This document shows, piece after piece, positions 12,496 to 56,696 of a stretch of 64,000 nt of DNA. The number at the start of each line of letters is the position of its first letter. Position 1 is the first letter of the stretch. The DNA comes from Dendrobates tinctorius (lineage: Eukaryota), in the NCBI RefSeq assembly GCF_039654945.1, contig NW_027361739.1:10168001-10232000 (forward strand), in the 5' to 3' direction. The notes under the pieces are model-generated. The model saw only the letters and a list, made by a program, of their open reading frames with translations. It had not been told where the DNA came from and did no database searches. The position numbers and the translations under genes were made by a program.

Positions 12496-13133
12496 AGTCA
12501 CTATTTGGTTTTTGAAGACAGTATATGCGGAAATCAATAAATGCCCAGTGCAAATACATAGTGACTAATCTGTAATGCATTGGAAAGAAGGCAATATCTG
12601 GTTGACTGCTATGGTATTGCCCTGACTCAAGGCAAAAAATGCAGTAAATTGTGAAGGGTTTTATTACAGTTTATTGTGGAAATGTTGCAGATTTGAATTA
12701 CAAATGGTAAAATCCACTGTGATAATCTGAGGAGTTAAAAATCCGCCCCGCAATCAATTTATGCTGTGGTTTTATATATCTCATCTCCTTTGATGGTACT
12801 GTAGTATGCTGAGGATTTCTCGTGTGCAATTCTACAGCAGAAAATGTGCCGGGTATTCGCTATGTGATAGTATATCTGTACATACAACCTCCATGGCTGT
12901 AGCTTTTATAGGTGCTTAGCCTCTAATAAATGGAGTTAGGCAGCTGCTGTCCATGGTGCTACAGTATGAGTGGGTCTAAGGCAGAATGCTAATTATGCAA
13001 ATTGTCTCTTCAGAGAGGAAGAGGACTAGAACTCTAGTGCCACCTATTGGAGGTAGCAATCCTAAAAGTCAATGTCGACCCTTTAACGAGCCTTGTTACA
13101 TGACTTAGGATAAAAGCCAAGCCAGAATCTCCA

Positions 13134-13178
13134 TTTGCAGACACTGTGTTTCGGGGTACTGCCCCTCATCAGTGCAAA
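13134..13178 (-). ncRNA. Type I hammerhead ribozyme, copy 1
   Basis: Minus strand reads UUUGCA-CUGAUGA-GGGG cagua CCCC-GAAA-CACAGUGUC^UGCAAA. Canonical core with a GUC cleavage triplet. Confidence 0.93.
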
Positions 13179-13459
13179 GTGAGAGATCTGGTTTGGCTGT
13201 GAGAGAGGCGTCTGACCGATATCCAAGAAGTATAATTTCTCCTTGTGGAGAATGACATGCTAAGCATGTCGAGGTGAGGAGACTTAAAGCCGCAATGCTC
13301 CTCTGGGAAATATGCTAATTATCCAAATTGTCTCTTCAGAGAGGAAGAGGACTAGAACTCTAGTGCCACCTATTGGAGGTAGCAATCCTAAAAGTCAATG
13401 TTGACCCTTTAATAAGCCTAGTTACATGACTTAGGATAAAAGCCAAGCCAGAATCTCCA

Positions 13460-13504
13460 TTTGCAGACACTGTGTTTCGGGGTACTGCCCCTCATCAGTG
13501 CAAA
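13460..13504 (-). ncRNA. Type I hammerhead ribozyme, copy 2
   Basis: Identical core, 326 nt from copy 1. Confidence 0.93.
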
Positions 13505-14811
13505 GTGGGAGATCTGGTTTGGTAAGGCTGAATGCTGATATACGGTAGTAACCCTTTACCTAATCACATTGCGCTATATTATCGCTTTCTTGCAGAAGAG
13601 GAGAATTGCTCTTCCATATTGACATATAAATGTAAGATAAAAGCATCCGCTGCCAAGGTGATGCTGGTACTCTGCCCCGATGTACTACAGATGGGAGCAA
13701 TGAGACAGGTAATTGGCTGTCACTTAGATCACAGCCATCATTATACGAGTACATCACTTATATTCACTATTACATTCATGACCTTTACAGTCAATGATGC
13801 AGGAAGGGATCCTGAACATACACAGCTGCATAATCTGTAGGATGAAGAAAGGGTTCACAAACTTTAGATTCTGGGTCTTCACCTGCCAATTTATGACTGC
13901 ACAGCAAAAGTGCACGGAAATCAAAGTACTGCAAAACTGCAGCTAAGGGCTCATTCACATGCTGCTTTTTTTGGCATATTTATCTGTGCATTTTTGCAAA
14001 AGAAAAACGCAGCAAGTTACAGTACCAGCAAAGTGAATGAGATGTCTACAACCTCAAGGACATTCTGTGCAGGTATTTCATGCAGCAATTTTCGTGCCAA
14101 CATTTTGAATTTTTTTGCTGCTGAAAATACTGAACGTGTGCCTTAGTCTTACCGAGTTTAACAGATGGGTTCATTAAAGTTTATATTTTGAAAGACCAGA
14201 TTGTTAGGAATGCAGTTATTTGTTTCATGTCATTATTTTTTATGGAGAAGAGGGGGTGATTTGAATTTTGATGGGTAAGAGCGTCCTGCCAAATACCTAA
14301 GACAAAGGCGAATTGATGTGAATTTTTTTTTCCAGATTCTGTCTCTCACAGGTGAAGTGTACCTACAATGAAAATTAGACCTCGCCATTCTTTGTAGGTT
14401 GGAATAATTGCAAAATCGTCAATGAAACAAATACTTATTTTCCCCACTGGATAGATCGGGGCTGATATGTCCTGTGCTGGGTGCTATTTTGGACACCGAC
14501 CTTTGTGTCTACTATTCTTTATTCATCTGACTTGTGCACTCATATCAATAAACCTAGCTTTGATACTATCATATGTACTGTACTGTGTAGTTGCTAAAAC
14601 ACTCTTTGTAGTCGACCTGCTTTTATGGTATCGCTCTGTTTCCTACATATGTAATTTCAATAATGTATAAATTTTAGTTGTAAAAATTCCTTTTTATTCT
14701 TTTCTGTGTAAAGCCGATGTGGAGTCAGCTTTTCTCAACTAAATTACAATGGTTGTATAATGGCTGAATTGACTGTTTGATAAAATGTACCGAGTGGACA
14801 CATTTTGTTTA

Positions 14812-38705: not shown

Positions 38706-40342
38706 CATTTAGGTCCATATATATTTGGACAGAGACAACATTTTTCTAATTTTGGTTCTAGACATTACCACAATGAATTTTAAACAAAACAATTCAGATG
38801 CAGTTGAAATTCAGACTTTCAGCTTTCATTTGAGGGTATCCACATTAAACTTGGATGAAGGGTTTAGGAGTTTCAGCTCCTTAACATGTGCCACCCTTTT
38901 TCAAAAGTAATTGGACAGATTAAATAATTGTAAATAAAATGCTCATTTCTAGTACTTGGTTGAAAACCCTTTGCTAGCAATGACTGCCTGAAGTCTTGAA
39001 CTCATGGACATCACCAGACGCTGTGTTTCCTCCTTTTTGATGCTCTGCCAGGCCTTCACTGCGGTGGTTTTCAGTTGCTGTTTGTTTGTGGGCCTTTCTG
39101 TCTGAAGTTTAGTCTTTAACAAGTGAAATGCATGCTCAATTGGGTTGAGATCAGGTGACTGACTTGGCCATTCAAGAATATTCCACTTCTTTGCTTTAAT
39201 AAACTCCTGGGTTGATTTGGTTTTATGTTTTGGGTCATTGTCCATCTGTAGTATGAAACGACGACCAATCAGTTTGGCTGCATTTGGCTGGATCTGAGCA
39301 CACAGTATGGCTCTGAATACCTCAGAATTCATTCGGCTGCTTCTGTCCTGTGTCACATCATCAATAAACACTAGTGACCCAGTGCCACTGGCAGCCATGC
39401 ATGCCCAAGCCATCACACTGCCTCCGCCGTGTTTTACAGATGATGTGGTATGCTTTGGATCATGAGCTATACCACGCCTTCGCCATACTTTTCTATTTCC
39501 ATCATTCTGATCGAGGTTGATATTGGTTTCATCTGTCCAAAGAATGTTCTTCCAGAACTGTGCTGGCTTTTTTAGATGTTTTTTAGCAAAGTCAAGTCTA
39601 GCCTTTTTATTCTTGATGCTTATGAGTGGCTTGCACCGTGCAGTGAACCCTCTGTATTTACTTTCATGCAGTCTTCTCTTTATGGTAGATTTGGATATTG
39701 ATACGCCTACCTCCTGGAGAGTGTTGTTCACTTGGTTGGCTGTTCTAAAGGGGTTTCTCTTCACCATGGAGATTATTCTGCGATCATCCACCACTGTTGT
39801 CTTCCGTGGGCGCCCAGGTCTTTTTGCATTGATGAGTTCACCAGTGCTTTCTTTCTTTTTCAGGATGTACCATACTGTAGATTTTGCCACTCCTAATGTT
39901 GTAGCAATTTCTCGGATGGGTTTTTTCTGTTTTTGCAGCTTACGGATGGCTTGTTTCACCTGCATGGAGAGCTCCTTTGACCGCTTGTTTCCTTCACAGC
40001 AAAACCTTCCAAATGCAAGCACCACACCTCAAATCAACTCCAGGCCTTTTATCTGCTTAATTGAGAATGACATAATGAAGGGATTGCCCACACCTATCCA
40101 TGAAATAGCCTTGGAGTCAACTGTCCAATTACTTTTGGTCCCTTTAAAAACAGCGTGGCACATGTTAAGGAGCTGAAACTCCTAAACCCTTCATCCAATT
40201 TTTATGTGGATACCCTCAAATGAAAGCTGAAAGTCTGAACTTCAACTGCATCTGAATTGTTTTGTTTAAAATTCATTGTGGTAATGTCTAGAACCAAAAT
40301 TAGAAAAAGTTGTCTCTGTCCAAATACATATGGACCTAACTG
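38706..40342 (-). mobile_element. Tc1-like transposon with ~210-bp TIRs
   Basis: TA TSDs and long inverted repeats (38706-~38915 / ~40125-40342). Confidence 0.95.
38949..39965 (-). CDS. Tc1 DD34E transposase, open frame; native ATG apparently mutated
   Basis: GRPRKT, WTDET, MDNDPKH and SPDLNPIE, with exactly 34 residues between the second D and E. The ORF-track start is GTG; the first ATG is MQVKQ. Confidence 0.88.
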   Translation of the reverse strand: MQVKQAIRKLQKQKKPIREIATTLGVAKSTVWYILKKKESTGELINAKRPGRPRKTTVVDDRRIISMVKRNPFRTANQVNNTLQEVGVSISKSTIKRRLHESKYRGFTARCKPLISIKNKKARLDFAKKHLKKPAQFWKNILWTDETNINLDQNDGNRKVWRRRGIAHDPKHTTSSVKHGGGSVMAWACMAASGTGSLVFIDDVTQDRSSRMNSEVFRAILCAQIQPNAAKLIGRRFILQMDNDPKHKTKSTQEFIKAKKWNILEWPSQSPDLNPIEHAFHLLKTKLQTERPTNKQQLKTTAVKAWQSIKKEETQRLVMSMSSRLQAVIASKGFSTKY

Positions 40343-40664: not shown

Positions 40665-43600
40665 TGTTATGACGGAGTCACCGTAGGAGGCAAAAACAGA
40701 AATGCTGGCTAAGTCCAGAAAACCAGAGAAGTTGGCAGCTATCGGATTGCAGACCCCTGAACCTATCAACAGCAACTAGCAGTAGCCGTGGGGGGTTCCT
40801 ACGGTGCCCTAGACCCCTCGATCATAGCCGGAGAACTACATAGCCTAAAGACAGAAAGGGAAATCTAAACTGCCCCAGAGCAGACCCCAAAACAATAGGC
40901 AGCCCCCAACATATAATGACGGTGAAGCAAGAAGAAAAAACACTAACACAGATAGAAAGATAGACTGAGCAAATGATGGGGCCCAAGCTAACTAGATAGG
41001 ACAGGATAGAAAAGCTGCTGTCTGCAATCCGCCAAAAACCCTATCAAAACAAGAGCCAACAGACTGACAGAGAAAAAGGCCCTGAAGATGCTAGGCTTCA
41101 AAAAGACTATGTCAGTACTCAGGTATTTTCTGAAGACAGAGCAAAAAGACACAAAGGAATTCAACTCACCCCAGCAGGGAATGGCAGAATCCAGAAAAGC
41201 AAGGCAAAATAAAACCAAAACACAAATGCAAAAAGCAAAGCAGAAAACTTAGCTTTTAAGGAGCAGGAATCAGATTGGGTCTCCTAGAATCCCTCAGAGA
41301 AATCACCAGCGAGGCAGAAGGGCATCGGCTGCCTTATATCCAGTCAGCAATTCCCGTCACCCAGTCATCCTCTACCAGCTCAGGTGTTTGGTAATCAGCC
41401 TCACTAACTTCCTTCACCAGAAGAGGGAGTTCATCAGACCTCAATGGTGAAGGGGAAAAATGAACTCATAACAGTACCTCCCCCTTGAGGACGGGTCATC
41501 GAACCCTCATCCACGCCACCAGAGCGATCAGGGTGAGCCCGATGAAAGGCACGCACCAATCTTTTGGCATGAATATCAGAGGCAGAGACCCAGGAATTAT
41601 CCTCCTGACCATAACCCTTCCACTTAACAAAATACTGGAGTCTCCGTCTAGCCAGACGGGAATCCAGGATCTTCTCTACCTCATATTCCATGTTACCTTC
41701 AACCAATACAGGGTCCGGAGGTGCCACCCCAGGAACTACTGGTCCAACAAACCTCTTCAACAAGGACTTATGAAACACATTATGGATTTTAAATGTGACA
41801 GGAAGAGCCAACCGAAAAGAGACCGGATTAATGATCTCCAAAATCTTGTAAGGTCCAATAAATCTAGGCTTAAACTTAGGAGAAGCTACCTTCATAGCGA
41901 TATTTTTTGATGATAACCAAACCATATCATCCACCTTAAACCGGGGACCAATGGTCCTATGTCGGTTGGAAAACCGCTGGGCCTTTTCCTGGGAGAGAGA
42001 TAACTTATCCACCACTTGGTCCCAGATCTGGTGCATTCTCTCCACCACAGTGTCAACACCTGGGCAGGCAGAAGGCTCCACCTGCCCTGAAGAAAATCGA
42101 GGATGAAACCCAAAGTTACAAAAAAAAGGTGACATCAAAGTGGCAGAACTAGCTCTATTATTTAAAGCAAATTCGGCCAAGGGCAAAAATGAAACCCAAT
42201 CATCCTGATCAGCGGAAATAAAACATCTCAAATACGACTCCAAGGTCTGGTTTGTTCTCTCCGTCTGCCCATTGGTCTGAGGGTGAAACGCAGTGGAGAA
42301 GGACAACTGAATTCCCAGCTTGGAACAGAAAGTCCTCCAAAATCTAGACACAAACTGAACTCTTCTGTCAGATACAATGTTCTCAGGAATCCCGTGCAAG
42401 CGAACCACCTGTTGCAAAAACAGGGGCACCAACTCAGAAGAAGATGGCAACTTAGGGAGTGGTACAAGATGAACCACCTTAGAGAACCTATTACAAATCA
42501 CCCAAATAACAGTCATTCTCTGAGAGACAGGCATATCAGAGATGAAATCCATTGAAATATGGGTCCATGGCCTCCTGGGGACCGGCAAAGGCATCAACAA
42601 CCCATTAGAGCGAAAACAAGGTTTAGACCGGGAGTCCCACAGGACTGCACAAAATTCCTGACATCACGAGACAAGGCGGGCCACCAAAAAGACCGACTCA
42701 CCAGATCTCTAGTACCAAAAATACCTGGATGACCAGCCAATGCAGAGCAATGAACTTCAGACATAACTCTCTTCTTCCACTGGTCAGGAACATACAACTT
42801 TCCACTGGGACAACGCTCAGGTTTGTCCTCCTGGAACTCTTCCAGAGCATGTCTCAAATCGGGCGAGATGGCAGAAAGAACTACCCCTTCGCCTAAGATG
42901 GTAGCAGGCTTGGTCACCACAGGAGAATCAGCCAAGAAGCTCCTAGAAAGAGCGTCAGCCTTGACATTCTTAGTGCCAGGAAGAAAAGAGAGCACAAAAT
43001 CAAAACGTGTAAAAAAACAAGGCCCATCTAGCCTGTCTAGGGTTCAAGCGTTTGGCCGACTCCAGGTAAATCAAATTCTTGTGGTCAGTGAGGACCACGA
43101 CTTGATGTTTAGCTCCCTCCAACCAATGTCTCCACTCCTCAAATGCCCATTTCATGGCTAACAGTTCCCGATTCCCCACATCATAGTTACGTTCAGATGG
43201 GGAGAACTTTCGGGAAAAGAAAGCACAGGGATTCATTTTAGATGTTACAGGATCCTTTTGGGACAAAACAGCTCCTACACCAATCTCAGAAGCGTCCACC
43301 TCTACCTGGAACGGGAGTGAGACATCAGGTTGCCGCAAAACCGGGGCAGAAATGAATCTTCGCTTCAGCTCCTGAAAGGAAGAAACAGCCTCCGGAGACC
43401 AATTCAACACATCAGCACCCTTCTTAGTCAGATCAGTCAATGGCTTGGCAATACTAGAAAATTTTGCTATAAATTTCCGATAAAAATTAGTAATCAATAC
43501 AAGGCCTTAATGAACCATCCTTTTTTGCCACGAAAAAAAAAACCAGCACCTAATGGTGAAGAGGATGGTCTAATATGACCCTTCTCCAACGCCTCCTTAA

Positions 43601-45902
43601 TATAGGATCGCATAGCCTCATGCTCGGGTACAGATAAATTGAAGAGCCGACCCTTGGGAAATTTACACCCCGGGCTCAGTTCAATTGCACAGTCATAACT
43701 CCTATGAGGAGGCAAAGACGCAGACTCATTCTCACTAAATACATCATGAAAGTCCGCCAAATAGTCAGGAACATCATGTGACTGAGGAGAGGTGGAAAAA
43801 AACAGAGCCTCACTAAGGGCACACCGACAACCCCAACTCACCACAGTCACAGATTTCCAATCCAAAACTGAATTATGAATTTGCAACTAGGGAAACCCCA
43901 GAACAATGGTATCATGCAAATTATGCAACACCAAAAATCTGCAATTTTCTTGATGGTCTGGGGCGACCCGCATTACTACCTGGGTCCAAAACTGAGGTTT
44001 ATTTTTCGCCAAAGGAGTAGCATCAATCCCCCTCAAAGGGATAGGCGTCCGCAGAGGTGTCATAGGAAATCCACAACGTTTAGCAAAATCCAAGTCCATT
44101 AGGTTCAGGAATCCACAAAAGCCTTGGCGGAAAATGTGGACAGGGAGCAGATCAGAGTAATTGCCAGAAGAAACTTAGGTTGAACACCACCCACAGAAAA
44201 CGTGTGTACAAAACGTTTCTCTCATTTAGGACAGAAATAATATGCGAGGCATCTCCACACAAAAAAACACAGCTTATTATGCCTTCTGAACTCCTGACGT
44301 TGCTCCCTGGACAAAACTCTGTCACATTGCATAGGTTCAGACACTTGTTCAACAGGTGGAAACACCTCTCGTGCAGTCCTGCGTTCACGTAAACGCCGAT
44401 CAACCTGAATGGCTAATGACATAGAATCGTCAAGACCAGAGGGAACAGGAAATCCCACCATAGTATCTTTTACGGCTTCTGACAAACCCTTCCGAAAGAA
44501 AGCTGCCAAGGCATTATCATTCCAGGTAAGGACCGCCCACTTTTGGAATTTTTGACAGTACAATTCTGCAGAATCTCGACCCTGGCTCAGTGCCAACAGG
44601 GTCTTTTCAGCCTGATCAATAGCATTAGGTTCATCATACAACAACCCCAAGGCTTGAAAAAATGCGTTCACATTAGTCAGAATAGGATCATCTGGTTTCA
44701 AAGAAAACGCCCAATCCTGGGGATCGCCACGCAGCAAAGAGATGACAATTTTAACCTGCTGCGCGGAGCTCCCTGACGAGTTAGGCTTCAAGGCAAAAAA
44801 TAATTTACAATTATTTTTGAAATTCAAAAATTTAGACCGATCCCCAAAAAACACATCAGGAGTAGGGATCTTTTGGTTCAACAGCATTTGAATGAGCAAG
44901 GTAGGCGGAAATTCCCCGCACTTCCGCAGCGAGCTGCTCCACACGATCAGACAATTGCTTTATCTCCATTGAGAGAAAAAAAATTCCCCCTACGGCCTCA
45001 GAGATATAGAGGAAAAAATATACACACCTTTTTTTTTTTTACAATTCTTTCCTGCTATTGAGTACCCTAGGATCTGCGGTATGGCTGGTGATTCTGTTAT
45101 GAATGAGTCACCGTAGGAGGCAAAAACAGAAATGCTAGCTAAGTCCAGAAAACCAGAGAAGTTGGCAGCTATCGGATTGCAGACCCCTGAACCTATCAAC
45201 AACAACTAGCAGTAGCCGTGGGGGGTTCCTACGGTGCCCTAGACCCCTGGATCACAGCTGGAGAACTACATAGCCTAAAGACAGAAAGGGAAATCTAAAC
45301 TGCCCCAGAGCAGACCCCAAAGCAATAGGCAGCCCCCAACATATAATGACAGTGAAGCAAGAAGAAAAAAACACTAACACAGATAGAAAGATAGACTGAG
45401 CAAATGATGGGGCCCAAGCTAACTAGATAGGACAGGATAGAAAAGCTGCTGTCTGCAATCCGCCAAAAACCCTATCAAAACAAGAGCCAACAGACTGACA
45501 GGGAAAAAGGCCCTGAAGACGCTAGGCTTCAAAAAGACTATGTCAGTACTCAGGTATTTTCTGAAGACAGAGCAAAAAGACACAAAGGAATTCAGCTCAC
45601 CCCAGCAGGGAATGGCAGAATCCAAAAAAGCAAGGCAAAATAAAACCAAAACACAAATGCAAAAAGCAAAGCAGAAAACTTAGCTTTTGAGGAGCAGGAA
45701 TCAGACTGGTCTCCTAGAATACCTCAGAGAAATCACCAGTGAGGCAGAAGGGCGTCGGCTGCCTTATATCCAGTCAGCAATTCCCGTCACCCAGTCATCC
45801 TCTACCAGCTCAGGTGTTTGGTAATCAGCCTCACTACCTTCCTTCTCCAGAAGAGGGAGTTCATCAGACCTCAATGGTGAAGGGGAAAATGAACTCATAA
45901 CA
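40665..45902 (-). mobile_element. Chromodomain Gypsy element lacking the RT core (LTRs 40665-41473 and 45095-45902)
   Basis: Paired LTRs, PPT and 6-bp TSD gctatg. At ~43490, CIDY is fused to NFYRKF, a ~0.5-kb deletion relative to the sister copy at 58-62 kb. Confidence 0.95.
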
Positions 45903-46458
45903 GCTATGGTTACATGGCGGTATGTGTCAGGTGACAATTACATTGTGTGTCTCATTGCAAGATAGAATATAACGATTTCTTAGGGTGTTACGTTGCGATT
46001 TTAACCTAACACGATTGCAGCATAGAGATACAAATGTAGAAATGTTTCCAAATGTGCTGGATTTTCTATTTTTCTTTATTACAGTAAAATAAAGGAGGCA
46101 ACACAGTTATATTGATAATATTGGGCGTTTTATTACTTCCTTACTTTCTATCATTATAAATTTGGGGTTCTTAGTGCATATTTTGATCAAATTGTGCAAG
46201 CCCATCTGCCAACGCAAGGCGACCTCATCAGATGGGGCCCTACACTAACAGACTAACCTATTTATTGTGTTTAAATTTTTCTTATTATCATTGCAATCCT
46301 TTCATTACTATTACATTATACATATTATTGCTATTATTACTGACAGGGATTACTATGGGATCCCTAGAATTAAAGCTGTTGATCCAGAAGAAGGCAAAGA
46401 CCCCTGGACACATTACGCCAATTTGTGTCAAAGGGAAAAATTCCTTCTTGACCCTGTG

Positions 46459-48380
46459 AAAAGGCGATCAGTCCTAGAACCCTGGATCCAACCTGCTGAT
46501 GCCTAATACTATACTATGCTATTATTATGAATATAGAAGAAAAAAAAGGTGTTCAGCTCACCATTAGATGAATTCCTGTGGCTTTGGGTGTGGACTCCAG
46601 GATGGTGCTCGGAAAAAGCGGCTGTGGTAATCAAACAAAAAAGTTCCAGCAACAAACATCTAAATCAGATTGTTGAATAGATGTTAAAACTTCATCTTTA
46701 TTGCAATGCCTTTAAAAAATTAATTTTTAAAGGCATTGCAATAAAGATGAAGTTTTAACATCTATTCAACAATCTGATTTGGATGTTTGTTGCTGGAACT
46801 TTTTTGTTTGATATGCTATTATTATGGTATTTCTGATAATACTATAGCATTAAAATTTATATTGCTATTTTATTACCACCACTATTTATTAAACATATTT
46901 ATTTATATTTTTTTAACTTAATATTGCTCATATTATAACTATTGTTACTAATATTTCTATAATCTCTCTATTTAATATTAATTAGATTTCTATTCCTAAT
47001 GCTATTGATCCAGAAGAAGGCAAAAAAAAATCTAGACACTTTCTGCCAATTCATGTCACAGGGGAAAAATTCCTTCTTGACCCTGAGAAAAAGGCGATCA
47101 GTCCTAGAACCCCTGATCAAATCCCCTAATACCTATTAAAAGTTACTATTATTAATATCTTATTTCTAAAATTATGATTTAATGTTATTATTTCTTTACT
47201 AGTGAAAATATTACTGTTTTATGATCACTAATATAACACTTTATACTATATTATATTACTATCCCAGTAGTGATAATTCTACTATAATCTTACTAATACC
47301 TAGGTTCTTTATTCCTAAAGGTGTTGATCCAGAAGAAGGCAATAACCCCTAGAAACATTCAGCCAATTGGTGTCTCAAGGGGAAAATTCCTTCTTGACCC
47401 CAGGAAAAGGCGATCAGTCCTAGAACCCTGGATCCAACCTGCTGATGCCTAATACTATACTATGCTATTATTATGAATATAGAAGAAAAAAAAGGTGTTC
47501 AGCTCACCATTAGATGAATTCCTGTGGCTTTGGGTGTGGACTCCAGGATGGTGCTCGGAAAAAGCGGCTGTGGTAATCAAACAAAAAAGTTCCAGCAACA
47601 AACATCTAAATCAGATTGTTGAATAGATGTTAAAACTTCATCTTTATTGCAATGCCTTTAAAAAATTAATTTTTAAAGGCATTGCAATAAAGATGAAGTT
47701 TTAACATCTATTCAACAATCTGATTTGGATGTTTGTTGCTGGAACTTTTTTGTTTGATATGCTATTATTATGGTATTTCTGATAATACTATAGCATTAAA
47801 ATTTATATTGCTATTTTATTACCACCACTATTTATTAAACATATTTATTTATATTTTTTTAACTTAATATTGCTCATATTATAACTATTGTTACTAATAT
47901 TTCTATAATCTCTCTATTTAATATTAATTAGATTTCTATTCCTAATGCTATTGATCCAGAAGAAGGCAAAAAAAAATCTAGACACTTTCTGCCAATTCAT
48001 GTCACAGGGGAAAAATTCCTTCTTGACCCTGAGAAAAAGGCGATCAGTCCTAGAACCCCTGATCAAATCCCCTAATACCTATTAAAAGTTACTATTATTA
48101 ATATCTTATTTCTAAAATTATGATTTAATGTTATTATTTCTTTACTAGTGAAATTATTACTGTTTTATGATCACTAATATAACACTTTATACTATATTAT
48201 ATTACTATCCCAGTAGTGATAATTCTACTATAATCTTACTAATACCTAGGTTCTTTATTCCTAAAGGTGTTGATCCAGAAGAAGGCAATAACCCCTAGAA
48301 ACATTCAGCCAATTGGTGTCTCAAGGGGAAAATTCCTTCTTGACCCCAGGAAAAGGCGATCAGTCCTAGAACCCTGGATC
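46459..48380. repeat. Near-identical 946-bp tandem duplication
   Basis: Landmarks recur at exactly +946 (46465/47411 and 47007/47953). Confidence 0.95.
46530..46811 (-). mobile_element. Short Penelope-like terminal insertion with a ~180-bp near-perfect palindrome (duplicate at 47476-47757)
   Basis: 15-bp TSD tatgctattattatg. Palindrome at 46630-46812. Minus-strand end ggtgagctgaacacc followed by a T-tract. Confidence 0.7.
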
Positions 48381-48616
48381 AAACTTGCTAATGTTATTTA
48401 TATGTTCCTATCTTTATTATACAATTAATATTAGTTACTGCTCTTATTAGACTATTACACACTATATTATTACTCCTAATATTATAAAAGTAATTTATAA
48501 TTTTTTACTACATTTTTAATATTTTTTAATCTAATAATTACTATTTTATCTATGCTTTTTATTAGTATTAGATTTGAAGCTGCCGATGTTACCCAACTCA
48601 GATGTCCATCAGCGTC

Positions 48617-48940
48617 TCATTGCTTTGAGGAGGATGGTCCAGATGATATTCCTCTTTCCTCTGAGGTTGGTGTGTTTATATAATGGAGGATGGACTGCTG
48701 GCGGATCTTCTGTCTTCATGCCGGCTGCTTCTGAACTCTTTTTGTTGAATTACTGTTCTTCTGCACATTTTCTATTTTCTCTTCTGATGCCTTCTAATCT
48801 TCTTCTTCTTCAGTGTCTCCTGCCTCATCTTCTTCAAGCTCTTTTACCCCCTGATATTTCATTGCTTCCCTGGGCATCTTCATCTCCTCTTTTTTTGGCT
48901 CCTCTGTCGTCATTGATTTTGGCTCCGGTTTTTCTTCATA
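48617..48940 (-). pseudogene. Decayed reading frame of an unknown charged/acidic protein
   Basis: After an acceptor-like tttccttag the frame reads YEEKPEPKS...ELEEDEAGDTEEEED*KASEEK...QPA*RQKIRQQSILHYINTPTS...KQ*, with two internal stops. Confidence 0.35.
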
Positions 48941-51900
48941 CTAAGGAAATTGCAGATACAGTATTTCTTCTGAGCTTCTCTGTTGGTCGGCATGAGGCGC
49001 TAAGGAAAGAATATATTCAGTCAGTTGTCTAATGAGACATTCCTTTACATGTATGGACAGAACATGGACGACATAATATGCGGTATGATCAGTGACCACC
49101 ATCTTGAAGATGGTGACGGCAGTAGATCAGAAGTTGTTTTCGCTCCTTCTTTGTGCTGGGAGAAGCTGGAAAGAAAACACAGGCAGATAAGGGATCAATC
49201 ACACAATGTCCAGAGGAATCAAATCATTGAAATTACAGGAAAATTCCTTTAACCCAACAGCAATGTGACCTGATAGATTGTGAATGATTCTGGGCATAGT
49301 GTCACACTGCAGCACTGCAGGTAGCTGCAGAGTAGTGCAAACTCCACTAGATGGCAGCAGATTGGAGAATGAACAGAAGTCCTGCACAGAGCAGGGATAC
49401 AGGACTGCAGTGAGGCTACCACCAGGTGGCAACAGAATAGTCAGCAAGCCATGTCGATACCAGAGAGTAGTGAAGTACAGGGGAATTACAAACTCAGTCG
49501 GAGGGGAGCAAATAGGTCAGTGCTGGTCAGTAGAAGAGGTATCAGAAGGAAGACACAGAATCAGGTCAGAGCCAAAGACGAGTACTGGGGAATCCAAACA
49601 CCCAAGGACACACAGAGATGGGACGGGCAGGGATAGAGTACACAGACACAAGCAAAGTCAGCTAAACACAGCAGGACAATCCAGGGATTCTCCAGAGCCA
49701 GCTACACACGCCGTAGGCAGGAAATATAACTGACACTGCCTGCAGGATGCAGCGCAGAGAAATAGCATACCTGACACCTGAATGAGGCAGAGAAAAGTTA
49801 ACTGCTGACATGACCAGACAAGGGAAAGGAGAGACAGGAAAAACCCGGTCTGGATCATGACAGTACCCTCCTCTCAAGGGGGGCCACCGGACCCCCAGGA
49901 TAGCGTGCATGCAAAGCCCAGACCAACCGATCAGCATGGACTGATCGGGCCGGGACCCAAGATCGATCCTCAGAAATGTACCCCCTCCAATGTACCAAGT
50001 ACTGAAGCGAACTGCGAACCATCCGAGAATCAACATTCAGTTCCACTTCATACTCAGTTTGACCATCCATAGAGACAGGAGGCGGAGGGGATGGAGACGC
50101 AGCAGAAGAAGGTACAAATGACATAAGAAGTGACTGATGGAACACATTGGGGATACGAAGCGACGGAGTTAAGCGTAAGCGAAAGGCCACTGGATTGACA
50201 GTCTCAATGATCTCTTAAGGACCAATAAACATAGGACCCAGCTTAATGGAAGAAAGTTTCAGACGAATGTTCCCGGTAGACAATCACACCTGAAATATAG
50301 GTCCTACCGATCATTGCTTATCAGCAAAATGTTTCTGTTTGCCCTGAGTCACCTCAATGTTATTTTGGACCTCCCTCTATTCCTCCCCCAACCAAAATGG
50401 GGGTGAAAACCGTAGTTACAAGAAAAAGGAGAAGTGCCAGTGGACTGATTAACTCGATTATTAAATGCAAACTCAGCCACGGGCAACGAGGAACACCAAT
50501 CGTCCTGCTGAGACCTGGCAAGACACTGCAACATCTGTTCAAGTGACTGGTCCTCTCTGTCTGACAGTTGGTTTCGGGATGGTAGGCTGAGGAGAAGGTC
50601 AAGCTAATACCCAATCTTTTACAAAATGCCCTTCAAAATTTGGACACAAACTGCACCCCTCTATCAGACATCAAATTCAGAGGCACACCATGCAACCGCA
50701 CAGCATGCTTAATAAACAACTTCGATAGTGTTTCTGCGTTAGGTAGTCCTGCCAAAGGTACAAAATGCGCCTGTTTACTAACTCTGTCAACCACTACCCA
50801 GACTGTTATGAATGAGTCACCGTAAGAGGCAAAAGCAGAAATACAAGCTAAGTCCAGAAAACCAGAGAAGTTGGCAACTATCAGATTGCAGACCCCTGAA
50901 CCTATCAACACAACTAGCAGTAGCCGTGGGGGGTTCCTACGATGCCCTAGACCCCTCGATCACAGCCGGAGAATTACATAGGCCTAAAGAAAGAAAGGGG
51001 AAATCTAAACTGCCCCAGAGCAGACCCCAAAGCAATAGGCAGCCCCCAACATATAATGACGGTGAAGCAAGATGAAAACACTAACACAGACAGAAAGACA
51101 GACTGAGCAAAGACGGGGCCCAAAAACTACCTAGATAGGAAAGGACAGGAAGGCTGCTGTCTGCAATCTGCCAAAACCCTATCAAAGACATAAGCCAACA
51201 AGCTGATATGAAAAAGGCCCTGAAGCAGCTAGGCTTCAAAAACTAAATCAGCACTCAGGTATTTTCAGAAGACAGAGCTAAATGAATTCAGCACACCCCA
51301 GCAGGGAATGGCAGAAATCCAGAAAAACAAAGCAAAACAAAGTCAAGCACCAAAGCAAAAGGCCGAGCAGCAAACTTAACTTTAGAGGAGCAGGAATTCA
51401 GGCTGGTCTCCAAGGATCCCACAGAGAAATCACCCGCAGGGCAGAAGGGCGTCGGCAGCCTTATATCCAGTCAGTAACTCCACTCAGCCAGTCATCATCA
51501 TCAGCCTCAGGTGTTTGATAATCAGGCTCACTACCTTTCTTTACCAGAAGAGGGAGTTCCTCGGGCCTCAGTAATGAAGGGGAAAATGAACTCACAGTAC
51601 CTCCCCATTGAGGAGGGGTCACCGAACCCTCAACTACGCCACCAGGGCGATCAGGGTGAGCCCGATTAAAGGCACGCACCAATCTTTTGGCATGAATATC
51701 AGAGGCAGAGACCCAGGAATTATCCTCCTGACCATAACCCTTCCACTTAACCAAATACTGGAGTCTCCGTCTAGCCAGACGGGAATCCAGGATCTTCTCT
51801 ACCTCATATTCCATGTTACCTTCAACCAATACAGGGTCTGGAGGTGCCACCCCCGGAACAACAGGTTCAACAAACCTCTTCAACAAAGATTTATGGAACA

Positions 51901-53192: not shown

Positions 53193-53645
53193 GGAGCTGG
53201 AGACGCATGTAGCCATTGATCACGGGTATCTTTGATCTTATTACATTTCCTATGCACTTTATTTGAGTTTTTCTACTCTTTACTCTTTACAGGTACCTCT
53301 TTACCTGTTTATTATATGCACTTTATTGCGGATGGAATTTTTATGATCACTATATTTATTTATGGCTTATGTGTCTACTTAGTAATTACCTTCATGTATT
53401 ATGACATTTTATGGTATTGCATTATGTCCTTTTGTCTGGTTTTTTGTGTAATTAATAAAACATTTTTTTAAGTCTTTATAATTTGGACTTCTATTTAATT
53501 TGGTTTATTCATTTGTCGAGTAGGTTTTCATTGTTTTCTATGAATATCCGTATATGCTATATAGGTTGTTGGCTTGTTTATATACCCTCGTTTTCTTGGG
53601 TAATTTAACCACTAAGTTGTGCTCTTTTTTTCTGCTTTCTTTAAG

Positions 53646-56600
53646 ATGGATCTCCGTTCTCTTGAGGCCAATTGGCTCTTACAGGCAGAAAATGTTTTTA
53701 AAGGGGAACCAGTACAGGACAATTCTAACCATAATAATATACGTGAGCTCAAAAGCAAACTCAAGAATTGTTTCCACCGTAGAATAAAAATTTGGTGGAA
53801 TAAAGTTTTTTTAGAAAATTATTTAAGTAAAAATCTTATTCCTAGAGGTTTAAGGGTGCAGTTGTTTCCTTCTTATGGAAGAGATGATGCTAAATTCTCA
53901 TCAGCATGGGAGAATATCTGTAATACCTGTTCTCGTTCCTTTTTGTCATTGATAGTTGAGTATAACTCTCAGTCTTTACCTATACTTGAGAAGGAGATTG
54001 AGGGGCTTAATATGGACCTCAGTAAATTGATTACACCTGCTGAGACTGAGAAATTTAGAAAAGAATTGGAGGATCTACATTTAACTTGGGAAAAACAAAT
54101 TAAAGATGTAAAGACAAAAAAATATACTAGGGACCTATCAGATGCAGAGAATAATAGGGTGTATAAATGGAAGCTCCCTTCAAGACAGAATAGGAAGAGG
54201 AGTAACTCTATGACTTCATCCACATCTATGGAATCCTCTCATTCTGGCCTTGGACGAAGCTATAATACAAGGAACCGCAAGCGGAAGAACAACCCTACAC
54301 GGGTGTCTCCAATCCGGAAAAAAGATACCCCAGGCCCGAGCGGTGTGTCGTCTAACAAGGTAATAAATCTATCCAATATTGATTTGACGCCTCAGCAGAT
54401 CGAAGTTTTAGATTTGGGGCTTAGTTTTTCACCAACTGCTAAATTTGACACGTTTTTAGCAGTAAAAGATCTACATCTCTTTGCCCGTAGACTCCTTCTT
54501 AAAAAATTACACCACAGGACAAATGATAGAATGGATAAGGAATTTGAAACTGAGGAAGAGATAGAGGCATTGGAAACATTAAACGAATTACTTTTGGAAC
54601 AGGAGCCCATAGAGAAGGGTAAGTTTCCTAGAGCTTTGGTTCCCAAATCTAAAAAATTTCCACCTCTTACTTTAAATGCCAATATTGATTTATTTGTCAA
54701 ATTGGTCAGTTTGGATTTGAAAAACATATCTACTGGTATCTCTGATTACAATTGCACCTTGGATCAGAAGAAAGCAATCAAAGAACTTTCCACAAGAACA
54801 GATGTAGTTATAAAACCATCAGATAAAGGTGGTAATACTGTAATCTGGCCATGTAATATGTATGAGAAGGAGGTGTATAAATTGTTGAGGGATACCAAGT
54901 GCTATAGGAGACTTACTTTTAATCCCCTTAATTCTTTCTGTTCACAGTTGAAAGATATTTTGACTAAAGCAGTTGATTCCTCAGTCATTACCAGAAAACA
55001 GATGGAATATTTGATTATGGACCATCCCACTATTGCGACATTTTACATACTCCCCAAGGTACACAAAAATGTTTTGTGTCCTCCTGGCCGCCCGATTGTG
55101 GCAGGCAATAATAATTTTTGCGAGCCTATTTGTAAATTAATTGACTATGTTCTCCATCCTTTGGTAGAAACCCTACCTTCTTATTTGAAGGATACAAATG
55201 ATGTTTTACGAAAAATGGATGGCCTACAGTTGGAAGAGGATATGTTCCTGGTGACTTGTGACATCGAATCTCTTTACACATCCATAAGACATGAAGATGG
55301 ACTGTTTGCCGTCAATCATTTTCTGTCGATGTCCAATGAAGATGGTGAGTTTTGCGAATTCATCATGTGTCTCCTCCAGTTTGCACTCACCCATAATTTT
55401 TTTATTTTTTCTGATCAGTTTTTCCTACAGCTCCAGGGCACAGCTATGGGGGCAGCTTTTGCGCCCTCATATGCTAATTTGTTCCTGGGGCTGTGGGAGA
55501 GAAGAATTTTTCCGACTGATTCTACACCTTTGGTGGATAGGGTGCAATACTGGGGGAGATACATTGATGATATTCTTTGTATTTGGCAGGGTTCCTTGGA
55601 TGAATTACACACATTTATGGACCATCTAAATGAAAACGATTTGAATCTACATTTGACTTACAAAGCGGGAAGATCCAATGTTGAATTTCTGGATGTTTTA
55701 CTCCAAGTGGATGATGCTGGTTTTGTCCATTCCGATGTGTTCCGTAAACCTACCTCGACAAATAGTCTCTTACATTTCTCTTCTTCCCATCAACGTAGTC
55801 TCATTCGTGGTATACCTGTGGGACAATTCTTACGTATGCGACGTATTTGTTCAAAGGAAGAACTGTTTGAAAAACAGAGTAGGGATCTAAGTACGAGATT
55901 TAGAGAAAGAGGATATCCTGATGCATATATTGAGCAAGGCTATTGGCGAGCGAAAAGAACTGAATGCTTATCGGCACTTCATAAACGCAAATCCAGTATT
56001 CAGACCTCTGATAAGGTACGCTATATTCAAACTTTTAATTGTAAGTGGCGTGAAATGAGTACTATTCTGACTAAACATTGGAAGGTTCTTCAGTTGGATC
56101 CGGTCCTTGCACAATATTTACCTCCAAAACCTGCCATTACATTTAGGAGATCTAGGAATATTCGTGATACACTTGTGCATAGTCACTATAAGAAGAAGGA
56201 GGTTAATGCGTTTGGATCACGAGGTCCTAAATGGGGTTGTCGTCCTTGTGGATCATGTGTAGCGTGTCCAAATATAGAGAGGTGTGAGGACTTCTCCAAT
56301 GCTGATGAGAATAGGTCTTTCCAAATTCTGCATCATATATCATGCACTACCACTGCAGTAATCTATTGTGCGAGCTGCCCTTGTAACCTAAAATATGTTG
56401 GTCTAACATCTAGGGAATTTAGGCGTAGGGTGAGAGAACATGTTTTGGATATCAAAGCAGCCAAAAATGTTTCTGATATCGACTCCCTTAAGACATTACC
56501 AAAGCATTTTAAGTTATTCCATCAAAGTAATGAATTATTATTAAAGGTACGAGGGATTGATCATGTCATATTGAACTCTAGAGGAGGGGATATCAAGAGA

Positions 56601-56696
56601 CGCCTCGCGCAAATTGAGACTAAGTGGATTTTTAGATTGGATACTATTGCACCCAAGGGCCTCAACGAACAGTTATCTTTTAATGCGTTTTTATAA
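53646..56696 (+). CDS. Penelope-like RT + GIY-YIG endonuclease, intact
   Basis: Motifs KPSDKGG, PKVHK, GRPIV, DIESLYT, GTAMG, RYIDD, a CxxCxxCxxC linker, VIY...YVG and GLNE. The ATG follows a polypyrimidine/AG acceptor. Confidence 0.95.
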   Translation: MDLRSLEANWLLQAENVFKGEPVQDNSNHNNIRELKSKLKNCFHRRIKIWWNKVFLENYLSKNLIPRGLRVQLFPSYGRDDAKFSSAWENICNTCSRSFLSLIVEYNSQSLPILEKEIEGLNMDLSKLITPAETEKFRKELEDLHLTWEKQIKDVKTKKYTRDLSDAENNRVYKWKLPSRQNRKRSNSMTSSTSMESSHSGLGRSYNTRNRKRKNNPTRVSPIRKKDTPGPSGVSSNKVINLSNIDLTPQQIEVLDLGLSFSPTAKFDTFLAVKDLHLFARRLLLKKLHHRTNDRMDKEFETEEEIEALETLNELLLEQEPIEKGKFPRALVPKSKKFPPLTLNANIDLFVKLVSLDLKNISTGISDYNCTLDQKKAIKELSTRTDVVIKPSDKGGNTVIWPCNMYEKEVYKLLRDTKCYRRLTFNPLNSFCSQLKDILTKAVDSSVITRKQMEYLIMDHPTIATFYILPKVHKNVLCPPGRPIVAGNNNFCEPICKLIDYVLHPLVETLPSYLKDTNDVLRKMDGLQLEEDMFLVTCDIESLYTSIRHEDGLFAVNHFLSMSNEDGEFCEFIMCLLQFALTHNFFIFSDQFFLQLQGTAMGAAFAPSYANLFLGLWERRIFPTDSTPLVDRVQYWGRYIDDILCIWQGSLDELHTFMDHLNENDLNLHLTYKAGRSNVEFLDVLLQVDDAGFVHSDVFRKPTSTNSLLHFSSSHQRSLIRGIPVGQFLRMRRICSKEELFEKQSRDLSTRFRERGYPDAYIEQGYWRAKRTECLSALHKRKSSIQTSDKVRYIQTFNCKWREMSTILTKHWKVLQLDPVLAQYLPPKPAITFRRSRNIRDTLVHSHYKKKEVNAFGSRGPKWGCRPCGSCVACPNIERCEDFSNADENRSFQILHHISCTTTAVIYCASCPCNLKYVGLTSREFRRRVREHVLDIKAAKNVSDIDSLKTLPKHFKLFHQSNELLLKVRGIDHVILNSRGGDIKRRLAQIETKWIFRLDTIAPKGLNEQLSFNAFL

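What the first reader, a model, noticed from the sequence alone, without database searches (positions are those of the whole stretch)
46381..48382. Tandem array of ENE-like (poly(A) triple-helix) RNA elements with covariation and a possible pseudoknot
Seen: a ~110-nt motif recurs five times (three distinct variants) between diverged AT-rich spacers. The native spacing is ~320-330 nt once the Penelope insertion is removed. On the minus strand each copy folds the same way: outer stem GAUCCAG/CUGGAUC (weakened to UUGAUC/GAUCAA in copies 2 and 4), stem AAGAAGG/CCUUCUU, an internal loop with U-tracts on both sides (AAUUUUU opposite UCUUU, U10 or UUAUU), an inner stem, and a conserved AAUUGGC apical loop able to pair with an upstream UCGCC. 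The inner stem varies yet stays paired (GACACA/UGUGUC, GACA/UGUC, GAGACA/UGUUUC). The G-U pair favours the minus strand. An AATAAA lies ~115 nt downstream (plus tttatt at 46261-66). Established: a U-rich internal loop flanked by short helices is the ENE architecture (KSHV PAN, MALAT1, plant/fungal TE ENEs) that clamps A-rich tails and stabilises RNA. Inference: this is a multi-ENE 3' stabilisation cassette of an unidentified transcript or element. From memory, unverified, a similar motif occurs singly in some amphibian/reptile CR1 3'UTRs. The CR1 in this window lacks it, so it may be a module that moves between elements.
Basis: partly seen in the sequence, partly recalled or inferred. Interest (0 to 1): 0.85.

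Follow-up and report, generated by a model that had tools for sequence, protein, structure and literature searches.

The report
Frog tandem repeat with ENE-like hairpin
A 110-letter module repeated five times behind a decayed frog gene copy belongs to a multi-copy repeat family shared by related frogs; it can fold on paper like an RNA "tail clamp" (ENE), but nothing here shows that it acts as one.

Summary
The repeat is real. Five cores of 110-114 nt lie at the stated places. Only three are distinct, because copies 4 and 5 come from a 99%-identical 946-bp duplication that also copied a 283-bp foldback insertion. Cores are 82-88% alike; the AT-rich spacers align no better than shuffled sequence.

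New here:
- Public contigs show the core is a multi-copy family (summed depth about 6-80 times that of the in-array spacers). It is about 90% alike in other species.
- The array starts about 45 nt behind a decayed minus-strand ORF that matches uncharacterised Ranitomeya protein models.

The ENE reading is partly supported. The hairpin on the ORF's strand has a 7-bp lower stem, a U-rich internal loop closed by G-C pairs, and an upper helix. Most other family copies carry the letter that turns copy 5's interrupted 3' loop side into five U.

Against it:
- No pair shows a double-sided change on either strand.
- No local copy passes a strict U-tract test, and the B copies fail even a relaxed one.
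- Shuffle-normalised folding does not pick a strand.
- The pseudoknot is only 3-4 bp.
- AATAAA is common on that strand.
- No Rfam family matches.
- Transcription is unshown.

Best reading: a lineage-specific 3'-flank tandem repeat, grown by DNA duplication. An ENE-like function is possible, at about 0.2.

The parts
46381..46490 (-). Core copy 1 (variant A). Its plus-strand 3' part, from about 46461, already belongs to the 946-bp duplicated unit.
   Evidence: 129.9 bits with model R1
47007..47120 (-). Core copy 2 (variant B). The 3' loop side is nine U, the GGGG of the upper stem is lost, and the outer stem is UUGAUC/GAUCAA.
   Evidence: no stable common fold, z = +0.69; fails the relaxed ENE descriptor
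47326..47436 (-). Core copy 3 (variant C). The loop sides are AAUUUU and UUAUUG.
   Evidence: (minimum free energy -43.8 kcal/mol, z = -2.25)
47953..48066 (-). Core copy 4, a duplicate of copy 2.
48272..48382 (-). Core copy 5, a 99% duplicate of copy 3. It is the first core behind the ORF on the minus strand.
46431..48322 (.). Two tandem units of 946 bp (46431-47376 and 47377-48322), 99% identical beyond the first ~30 bp. Each holds the insertion, a B core, a spacer and part of a C core. This is growth at the DNA level, after the insertion.
   Evidence: families D1, D2
46530..46812 (.). 283-bp foldback insertion with 89-nt arms that are 99% complementary. The 14-bp target duplication lies at 46516-46529 and 46813-46826. 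A second identical copy lies at 47476-47758. The element is unclassified.
   Evidence: (only generic hairpin hits)
48383..48560 (.). AT-rich spacer between the ORF remnant and the first core. About half of its minus-strand letters are A. It is co-repeated with the ORF flank in paralogous contigs.
   Evidence: (records 2, 3, 15, 17, 18)
48601..49208 (-). Decayed ORF copy similar to uncharacterised Ranitomeya protein models. It has an in-frame TAG at 48943-48941, five extra letters near 48957 and frame changes near 49107 and 48670. Most other copies differ at the TAG and at the five extra letters.
46261..46266 (-). AATAAA on the minus strand, 115 nt behind core copy 1. It is one of 15 on that strand in 45890-49260.

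Best explanation
This is a lineage-specific tandem repeat of frogs. Each unit of about 320 bp has a GC-richer core of about 115 nt and an AT-rich spacer of about 205 nt. The array forms the immediate 3' flank, probably the 3' UTR, of a low-copy ORF-bearing unit. That ORF is known only as 'uncharacterized protein' models in Ranitomeya. The local copy is decayed: the ORF is broken and a Gypsy element lies about 350 bp to the array's left, with Gypsy-like remains to its right.

The array's last growth was DNA-level unequal exchange. A 946-bp block, including a transposon insertion, was doubled. The contrast between core and spacer can be explained largely by faster decay of low-complexity AT-rich DNA, plus some constraint or homogenisation on three invariant blocks of the core.

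On the ORF's strand the core contains a hairpin with an ENE-like outline. Whether it acts as RNA is inferred, not shown.
For: Repeat anatomy and duplication.

Family status:
- In the DNA run of the same species, summed contig depth is 118-806 on the core bins and 10-20 on the in-array spacer bins, with 15-20 distinct contigs. A second species gives 126-1183 against 6-63.
- Contigs stop matching at 48268 and 48384, which are the core's edges, and run on into other AT-rich sequence.
- 'Goes back' joints point to tandem copies elsewhere.
- A run of a third species, listed as 'RNA?', holds cores about 90% alike but none of the spacers.

Link to the ORF:
- Paralogous contigs span core, spacer and ORF flank (records 2, 3, 15, 17).
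- The ORF matches P0001, P0006, P0007 and P0008 of Ranitomeya, and those models end at window 48601-48612.

Faster spacer decay: in the second species the core-plus-spacer piece shows about 12% differences, against about 5% for the ORF-flank piece (records 15 and 19).

Constraint inside the core: variable sites are clustered, with invariant runs of 24, 18 and 17 nt (P about 1.5e-4).
Against: The ORF-array link rests on assembler contigs and on automatic protein models. Those models use different frames in their C-terminal parts, so the 'ORF' may not be a real protein.

Contig depths are not copy numbers. The organisms are coded, so divergence times are unknown. If the third species is distant, 90% identity of the core alone would argue for stronger selection than this reading assumes.

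No transcript was shown to cover the array.
Confidence: 0.6

Rival explanations
1. ENE-like 3' module. Transcribed on the minus strand as part of the ORF's 3' UTR, each core folds into a hairpin whose two U-rich loop sides, closed by G-C pairs, clamp a poly(A) tail or an A-rich stretch as a U-A-U triple helix. This slows deadenylation and decay. Many units with many AAUAAA signals between them would put a clamp near whichever poly(A) site is used.
For: - The minimum-energy fold of variants A and C keeps a 7-bp lower stem, an open internal loop (AAUUUUU opposite UCUUUG or UUAUUG) and an upper helix closed by C-G.
- Nearly all other family contigs, in all four runs, read A at 48289. That makes the 3' side UUUUU. 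The variant inferred for the third species folds with U4 and U5 sides and an 11-bp upper helix.
- The array is on the same strand as, and directly behind, the ORF models.
- Minus-strand spacers are 44-51% A and hold 15 AATAAA, against 3 on the plus strand.
- Both arms of the lower stem and the 5' U-tract lie in invariant blocks.
- G-U pairs in A, B and C would be A-C mismatches on the plus strand.
- The definition of the class is in PMC7583470. ENEs behind transposon ORFs are described in PMC12501189 and PMC13541005.
Against: - No pair changes on both sides.
- Strict descriptor: 0 of 5 local copies pass. Relaxed descriptor: the B copies fail, 6 unrelated places in the window pass, and shuffles give 3.7 hits.
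- The 3' U-tract is the least conserved part of the loop.
- Shuffle-normalised folding is, if anything, better on the plus strand.
- The most abundant and most invariant block is the neighbouring 24-nt stretch, not the hairpin.
- With the majority letter at 48348, the outer stem competes with an alternative 5' hairpin.
- No A-run longer than 7 lies on the minus strand.
- No Rfam match.
- Transcription and its direction are unshown.
Confidence: 0.2
2. Another structured-RNA or small-RNA role. The cores would be repeated protein-binding or localisation modules of a transcript, by analogy (recalled from memory, not checked here) with the tandem-repeat Xlsirt RNAs of Xenopus oocytes. Alternatively they would be precursors of small RNAs, or an unknown self-cleaving motif in a genome rich in 320-350-nt hammerhead repeats.
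For: - A conserved core with unalignable spacers is the usual look of small-RNA gene clusters.
- Clustered invariant blocks include a 24-nt stretch outside the hairpin.
- The unit length of 319-329 nt equals that of the hammerhead repeat at 12977-13536 of this window (earlier notes).
- A run labelled RNA from a third species holds the core.
Against: - No Rfam family matches, ribozymes, snoRNAs and miRNAs included, even in 141-nt searches at E up to 10.
- There is no CUGANGA...GAAA hammerhead core on either strand.
- The hairpin arm of about 26 nt with a 7x6 internal loop is unlike a pri-miRNA.
- There is no sequence similarity to the window's hammerhead repeat.
- Internal T4 and T5 runs on the minus strand argue against an RNA polymerase III gene in that direction.
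Confidence: 0.1
3. DNA-level element. The core would be a short mobile element with 10-bp terminal inverted repeats (GTTGATCCAG ... CTGGATCAAC), or a cluster of protein-binding sites. Candidates are a CCAAT box in the hairpin loop and a near-palindrome around CTAG. The apparent RNA fold would then be a by-product of inverted repeats.
For: - Family similarity ends exactly at the inverted-repeat ends (48268 and 48384).
- High-depth, near-identical contigs suggest recent amplification.
- GCCAATT is invariant in the three local variants, though one other-species contig reads GTCAATT (table 5c).
- The fold scores about equally on both strands once composition is controlled.
Against: - No target-site duplications flank the local cores, and the letters just outside the cores are shared between units. 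The local array therefore arose by unit duplication, not by repeated insertion.
- Spacing is regular at 319-329 bp.
- There is no solitary copy in 64 kb.
Confidence: 0.1

Closest known systems
ENE (element for nuclear expression): KSHV PAN RNA, MALAT1 and MEN-beta, and the single and double ENEs of plant and fungal transposon RNAs (TWIFB1 hAT, Evade/Copia93)
   Same: A stem-loop with a U-rich internal loop closed by G-C pairs, placed behind an ORF on its sense strand, inside a repeated genomic unit. This matches the class definition in PMC7583470, PMC12501189 and PMC13541005.
   Different: - The local copies have interrupted or unequal U sides, and one variant lacks the upper G-C stem.
- Five modules lie about 320 nt apart, not one single or double ENE near the 3' end.
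- There is a large extra 5' domain.
- There is no covariation, no Rfam match and no RNA evidence.
- The host is a frog. The reviews read here (PMC7583470, PMC13541005) name no amphibian example.
Satellite or tandem-repeat families with a conserved part and a hypervariable part, and higher-order repeat units (general class; the frog satellite PcP190 is an example recalled from memory, not checked here)
   Same: Tandem units of fixed length, a conserved segment next to a fast-evolving AT-rich segment, a higher-order unit made by unequal exchange, and sharing between related species.
   Different: The array is short (five units), is tied to the 3' end of an ORF-bearing unit rather than forming long blocks, and has no sequence relation to any satellite I could test.
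Hammerhead-ribozyme tandem repeats (retrozymes) of the same genome
   Same: A unit length of about 320-350 nt, tandem arrangement, and a structured conserved segment within a variable unit (notes).
   Different: There is no hammerhead core, no Rfam ribozyme hit and no sequence similarity.

Membership tests
ENE (poly(A)-clamping triple-helix element) | Stem-loop with an internal loop whose two sides are both U-tracts (about five U each) | tested here: inconclusive
   The 5' side is AAUUUUU (A, B) or AAUUUU (C). The 3' side is UCUUUG (A), UUAUUG (C) or nine U (B). No local copy passes a descriptor requiring U>=4 on both sides. Copies 1, 3 and 5 pass with 4 U of 5. The family's majority letter at 48289 would give UUUUU.
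ENE (poly(A)-clamping triple-helix element) | G-C pairs directly next to the U-rich loop, needed for A-minor contacts (PMC7583470; PMC12501189) | tested here: inconclusive
   Met in variants A and C: the lower stem ends in G-C and the upper stem starts with C-G. In variant B the GGGG partner is replaced by U, so only a displaced 3-bp helix remains.
ENE (poly(A)-clamping triple-helix element) | Lies in a polyadenylated (or A-tract-ended) RNA, close to its 3' end, on the transcribed strand | tested here: inconclusive
   The array is on the same strand as the upstream ORF models. AATAAA lies 115 nt behind copy 1 and 13 nt behind copies 3 and 5, but AATAAA is common there. The contigs carry no direction, so no transcript was shown.
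ENE (poly(A)-clamping triple-helix element) | Stems supported by compensatory changes among homologues | tested here: not met
   0 of 33 predicted pairs (minus strand) and 0 of 27 (plus strand) change on both sides. Only three independent sequences were available.
ENE (poly(A)-clamping triple-helix element) | Binds oligo(A) as a triple helix and stabilises a reporter RNA | not testable with these tools
   This needs a gel shift or melting with oligo(A), plus an intronless reporter assay.
Tandem repeat / satellite-like family | Head-to-tail units of constant length, present at several loci, with higher-order units | tested here: met
   Units are 329, 319 and 319 bp once the insertion is removed. 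A 946-bp higher-order unit is 99% identical. Multi-copy contigs and 'goes back' joints occur in other runs.
Miniature inverted-repeat mobile element | Terminal inverted repeats plus a target-site duplication at each copy | tested here: not met
   A 10-bp inverted repeat is present. No duplicated flanks were found, and the flanking letters are shared between units.
Hammerhead or other known self-cleaving ribozyme | Conserved catalytic core recognised by the Rfam models | tested here: not met
   No hit at the gathering score or at E up to 10. No CUGANGA...GAAA core on either strand.
Coding exon array | An open frame kept across copies, splice sites, and indels in multiples of three | tested here: not met
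   The open frame differs between variants. Variant B is 4 nt longer than A, through 1-, 1- and 2-nt indels. There is no GT donor on either strand.

The most novel reading that the evidence does not exclude
A frog-specific, multi-copy ORF-bearing unit carries behind its stop codon an array of poly(A)-clamping ENE-like hairpins. Each sits in A-rich, AAUAAA-studded spacer, so that any poly(A) site used leaves a clamp near the tail. As far as the reviews read here go, this would be the first amphibian example of the class, and I know of no described tandem array of such elements.
Probability: 0.15. Interest if true: 0.8.

Novelty: new member of a known kind. Interest (0 to 1): 0.4.

Why it matters
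If the cores are only a decaying 3'-flank tandem repeat, this is ordinary repeat biology of a transposon-laden frog genome.

If they work as ENE-like clamps, RNA triple-helix stabilisers would reach amphibians, and in a new format: many spaced modules rather than one. The reviews read here place such elements in viruses, a few vertebrate long non-coding RNAs, plant, fungal and slime-mould transposons, and a stickleback retrovirus.

The family is small (cores at roughly a hundred times the single-copy contig depth; depth is not a true copy number) and shared by several species. A census and a covariation test would therefore be cheap and decisive.

Tried and rejected
- **Rfam.** Searched the whole window at gathering scores, the region at E up to 10, and two 141-nt cores alone. 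Nothing hit the core; only generic hairpin hits fell on the insertion.
- **tRNA scan.** No genes found.
- **Exact-pattern scans.** Metagenome (twice), prokaryote-genome and viral collections, searched for the invariant blocks: 0 hits.
- **Paper search.** Four core strings: 0 hits.
- **Harvesting more copies through spurious ORFs.** The translated core found no candidate. DNA around the Ranitomeya genes could not be fetched, because the file was too large or the protein was not on record. No larger covariation test was therefore possible.
- **Extra copies.** No decayed sixth copy in the flanks, and no copy elsewhere in the window.
- **Pfam.** Nothing on the ORF pieces or on the Ranitomeya models.
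- **Readings considered and rejected.** Exon array, hammerhead or other known ribozyme, pri-miRNA, box C/D or H/ACA snoRNA, 5S- or tRNA-derived unit with an RNA polymerase III promoter, and independent mobile-element insertions. Reasons are in the membership table and the full report.
- **Reads choice.** I laid reads only on 47930-49300, to avoid sending the 946-bp duplicate. Variant A and the left flank, with the proposed 3' end, were therefore not examined with reads.
Full report
**1. What is in the sequence**

Five cores of 110-114 nt lie at 46381-46490, 47007-47120, 47326-47436, 47953-48066 and 48272-48382.
- A 22-mer and a 17-mer are identical in all five, where about 0 matches are expected by chance.
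- A covariance model built from the three distinct variants finds exactly these five and nothing else in 64 kb at E up to 10.
- The copies are not five independent samples. The blocks 46431-47376 and 47377-48322 are 99% identical beyond the first ~30 bp, so copies 4 and 5 are recent duplicates of copies 2 and 3.
- The duplicated block contains a 283-bp foldback insertion (46530-46812) with 89-nt arms and a 14-bp target duplication. The array's last growth therefore came after that insertion and happened at the DNA level.
- The insertion has no match to the Penelope-like element at 53.6-56.7 kb. Its assignment to Penelope is unverified.
- Without the insertion the units measure 329, 319 and 319 bp.

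**2. Core against spacer**

- Cores have GC 0.42-0.48 and are 82-88% identical between variants.
- Spacers have GC 0.20-0.22 and align at 60-64%, against 58-61% for shuffled spacers.
- Inside the core the 25 variable columns are clustered. They leave invariant runs of 24, 18 and 17 nt (P about 1.5e-4 by permutation).
- The invariant runs hold both arms of the lower stem, the 5' U-tract, the 3' arm of the outer stem and a 24-nt stretch in the 5' domain.
- The top of the hairpin and the 3' U-rich side vary.

**3. Surroundings**

- To the left lies a Gypsy-type LTR element on the minus strand (40665-45902, LTRs of about 810 bp, target duplication GCTATG).
- To the right, from about 49250, lie further Gypsy-like remains.
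- Between the array and those remains, the minus strand of 49208-48601 carries a decayed ORF.
- A HMMER search of 1.84 billion representatives with a 61-residue piece gave one meaningful hit, P0001 (E = 5e-17, 77% identity). It is an 'uncharacterized protein' of Ranitomeya variabilis.
- Three more models of R. variabilis and R. imitator followed: P0006, P0007 and P0008.
- Mapped on the window, these models end at 48601-48612, about 45 nt before the AT-rich array begins.
- The local copy has an in-frame TAG at 48943-48941, five extra letters near 48957, and frame changes near 49107 and 48670. Most other copies in public contigs differ at the TAG and at the five extra letters.
- The Ranitomeya models use different frames in their C-terminal parts and have no Pfam domain. 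The protein itself is therefore doubtful; the transcript models are what matter here.

**4. The family in public data (runs)**

I laid contigs of four runs on 47930-49300. This stretch has no long internal duplicate.
- In a DNA run of the same species, summed depth is 118-806 on the core bins and 10-20 on the spacers inside the array, with 15-20 distinct contigs per site.
- A run of a second species, whose contig over the ORF flank is about 95% identical to the window, gives 126-1183 against 6-63.
- Contigs stop matching at 48268 and 48384, exactly the ends of the core, and continue into other AT-rich sequence.
- Several contigs 'go back', which means they hold two cores in tandem.
- Paralogous contigs span core, right spacer and ORF flank together (records 2, 3, 15, 17). 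The order ORF, then array, is therefore a property of the repeated unit and not of this locus alone.
- A run listed as 'RNA?' of a third species holds cores with 9-11 differences per 105-115 nt and none of the spacers.
- In the second species the core-plus-spacer piece shows about 12% differences and the ORF-flank piece about 5% (records 15 and 19). AT-rich spacer therefore decays faster, which explains much of the core-spacer contrast without strong selection.
- Limits: the contigs have no direction, their depths are not copy numbers, and the library types are guesses. Transcription is not shown.

**5. The fold**

There is an outer stem, a 7-bp stem AAGAAGG/CCUUCUU, an open internal loop, a CCC(U)/(A)GGG helix, an inner stem and an 11-13-nt loop.

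| Variant | Minus strand, kcal/mol (z) | Plus strand, kcal/mol (z) |
|---|---|---|
| A | -38.1 (-1.68) | -35.7 (-2.90) |
| B | -29.9 (+0.69) | -22.7 (-0.34) |
| C | -43.8 (-2.25) | -36.9 (-2.69) |

- Variant B does not adopt this fold on the minus strand.
- Raw energy favours the minus strand. Shuffle-normalised energy does not.
- RNAalifold on the three variants finds no pair with changes on both sides, on either strand.
- The inner stem 'staying paired' in variant C is a 2-nt register shift with a G-U pair, not a compensatory change at homologous columns.
- G-U pairs in A, B and C would be A-C mismatches on the plus strand. This is a weak vote for the minus strand.
- The proposed pseudoknot is GGC with GCC (GGCG with CGCC in A). 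The varying letter has no compensating partner, so it is at chance level.
- With the family's majority letter at 48348, the 5' domain forms its own hairpin and competes with the outer stem. The three-way junction is therefore not robust. The ENE-like hairpin persists in every variant folded and in variant A, but not in variant B.

**6. Is it an ENE?**

The class is defined as a stem-loop with a U-rich internal loop next to G-C pairs that allow A-minor contacts. It clamps a poly(A) tail or an A-rich tract (PMC7583470). The flanking G-C pairs and the U residues are essential in the Evade element (PMC12501189). ENEs occur behind transposon ORFs (PMC13541005).

For:
- The outline is present in A and C, on the sense strand of the ORF models.
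- At 48289 nearly all other family contigs, in all four runs, read A (113 of 127, 49.5 of 49.5, 46 of 46 and 390 of 390 in depth). This makes the 3' side UUUUU.
- The main variant of the third species, inferred from the table, folds with AAUUUU(C) and UUUUUG sides and an 11-bp upper helix.

Against:
- A strict descriptor (U>=4 on both sides, G-C closures, lower stem >=5 bp, upper stem >=3 bp) finds none of the local copies.
- A relaxed descriptor finds copies 1, 3 and 5 but also six unrelated places in the window, where shuffles give 3.7 hits. The geometry alone is therefore not rare.
- The 3' U side is the least conserved part of the loop.
- Only one core can be near a given 3' end.
- AATAAA is frequent: 15 on the minus strand against 3 on the plus strand. 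That fits an A-rich strand as well as it fits a design.
- No Rfam family matches.

I put the ENE-like function at about 0.2.

**7. Other readings**

- Exons are excluded. The open frame differs between variants, indels are not multiples of three, and there are no donor sites.
- Hammerhead and the other known ribozymes are excluded as far as Rfam and inspection go. The nearby hammerhead repeat at 12977-13536 has a similar unit length but no sequence similarity.
- A small mobile element with 10-bp inverted ends is suggested by the family's sharp edges. The local cores, however, have no target duplications and share their immediate flanks.
- A DNA-level role cannot be tested here. Candidates are the CCAAT box in the loop and a near-palindrome around CTAG.

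**8. Verdict**

It is unsupported in its function, its pseudoknot and its link to CR1.

Most likely this is a lineage-specific 3'-flank tandem repeat of a low-copy frog unit, here in a decayed copy. The ENE-like possibility is open and cheap to test.

Noticed in passing
window 40665-45902 (minus strand): A full-length Gypsy-type LTR retrotransposon. Its LTRs of about 810 bp are 97-99% identical and it has a 6-bp target duplication, GCTATG. Its gag, protease, RT and integrase reading frames are split into several ORFs.
   Followed up: partly
window 46530-46812 and 47476-47758: An unclassified 283-bp foldback insertion with 89-nt arms (99% complementary) and a 14-bp target duplication. Rfam gives only sub-threshold generic miRNA-hairpin hits. 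It has no match to the Penelope-like element of the same window.
   Followed up: partly
window 48601-49208 (minus strand): A decayed copy of a small family of 'uncharacterized protein' models of Ranitomeya variabilis and R. imitator (121-194 aa, acidic tail, no Pfam domain). The models use different frames in their C-terminal parts, so the coding status of the family is doubtful. The match suggests the genome is a dendrobatid or a relative.
   Followed up: partly
window 53619-56696 (plus strand): An intact-looking 1025-aa ORF that I read, without a domain search, as a Penelope-like element (reverse transcriptase with a cysteine-rich C-terminal endonuclease-like part).
   Followed up: no
window 38949-40025 (minus strand): A 358-aa ORF that looks like a Tc1/mariner transposase, just left of the Gypsy insertion.
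   Followed up: no
window 12977-13536 (minus strand): A tandem repeat of about 326 nt carrying a canonical hammerhead core (CUGAUGA ... Its unit length resembles that of the array studied here, but there is no sequence similarity.
   Followed up: partly
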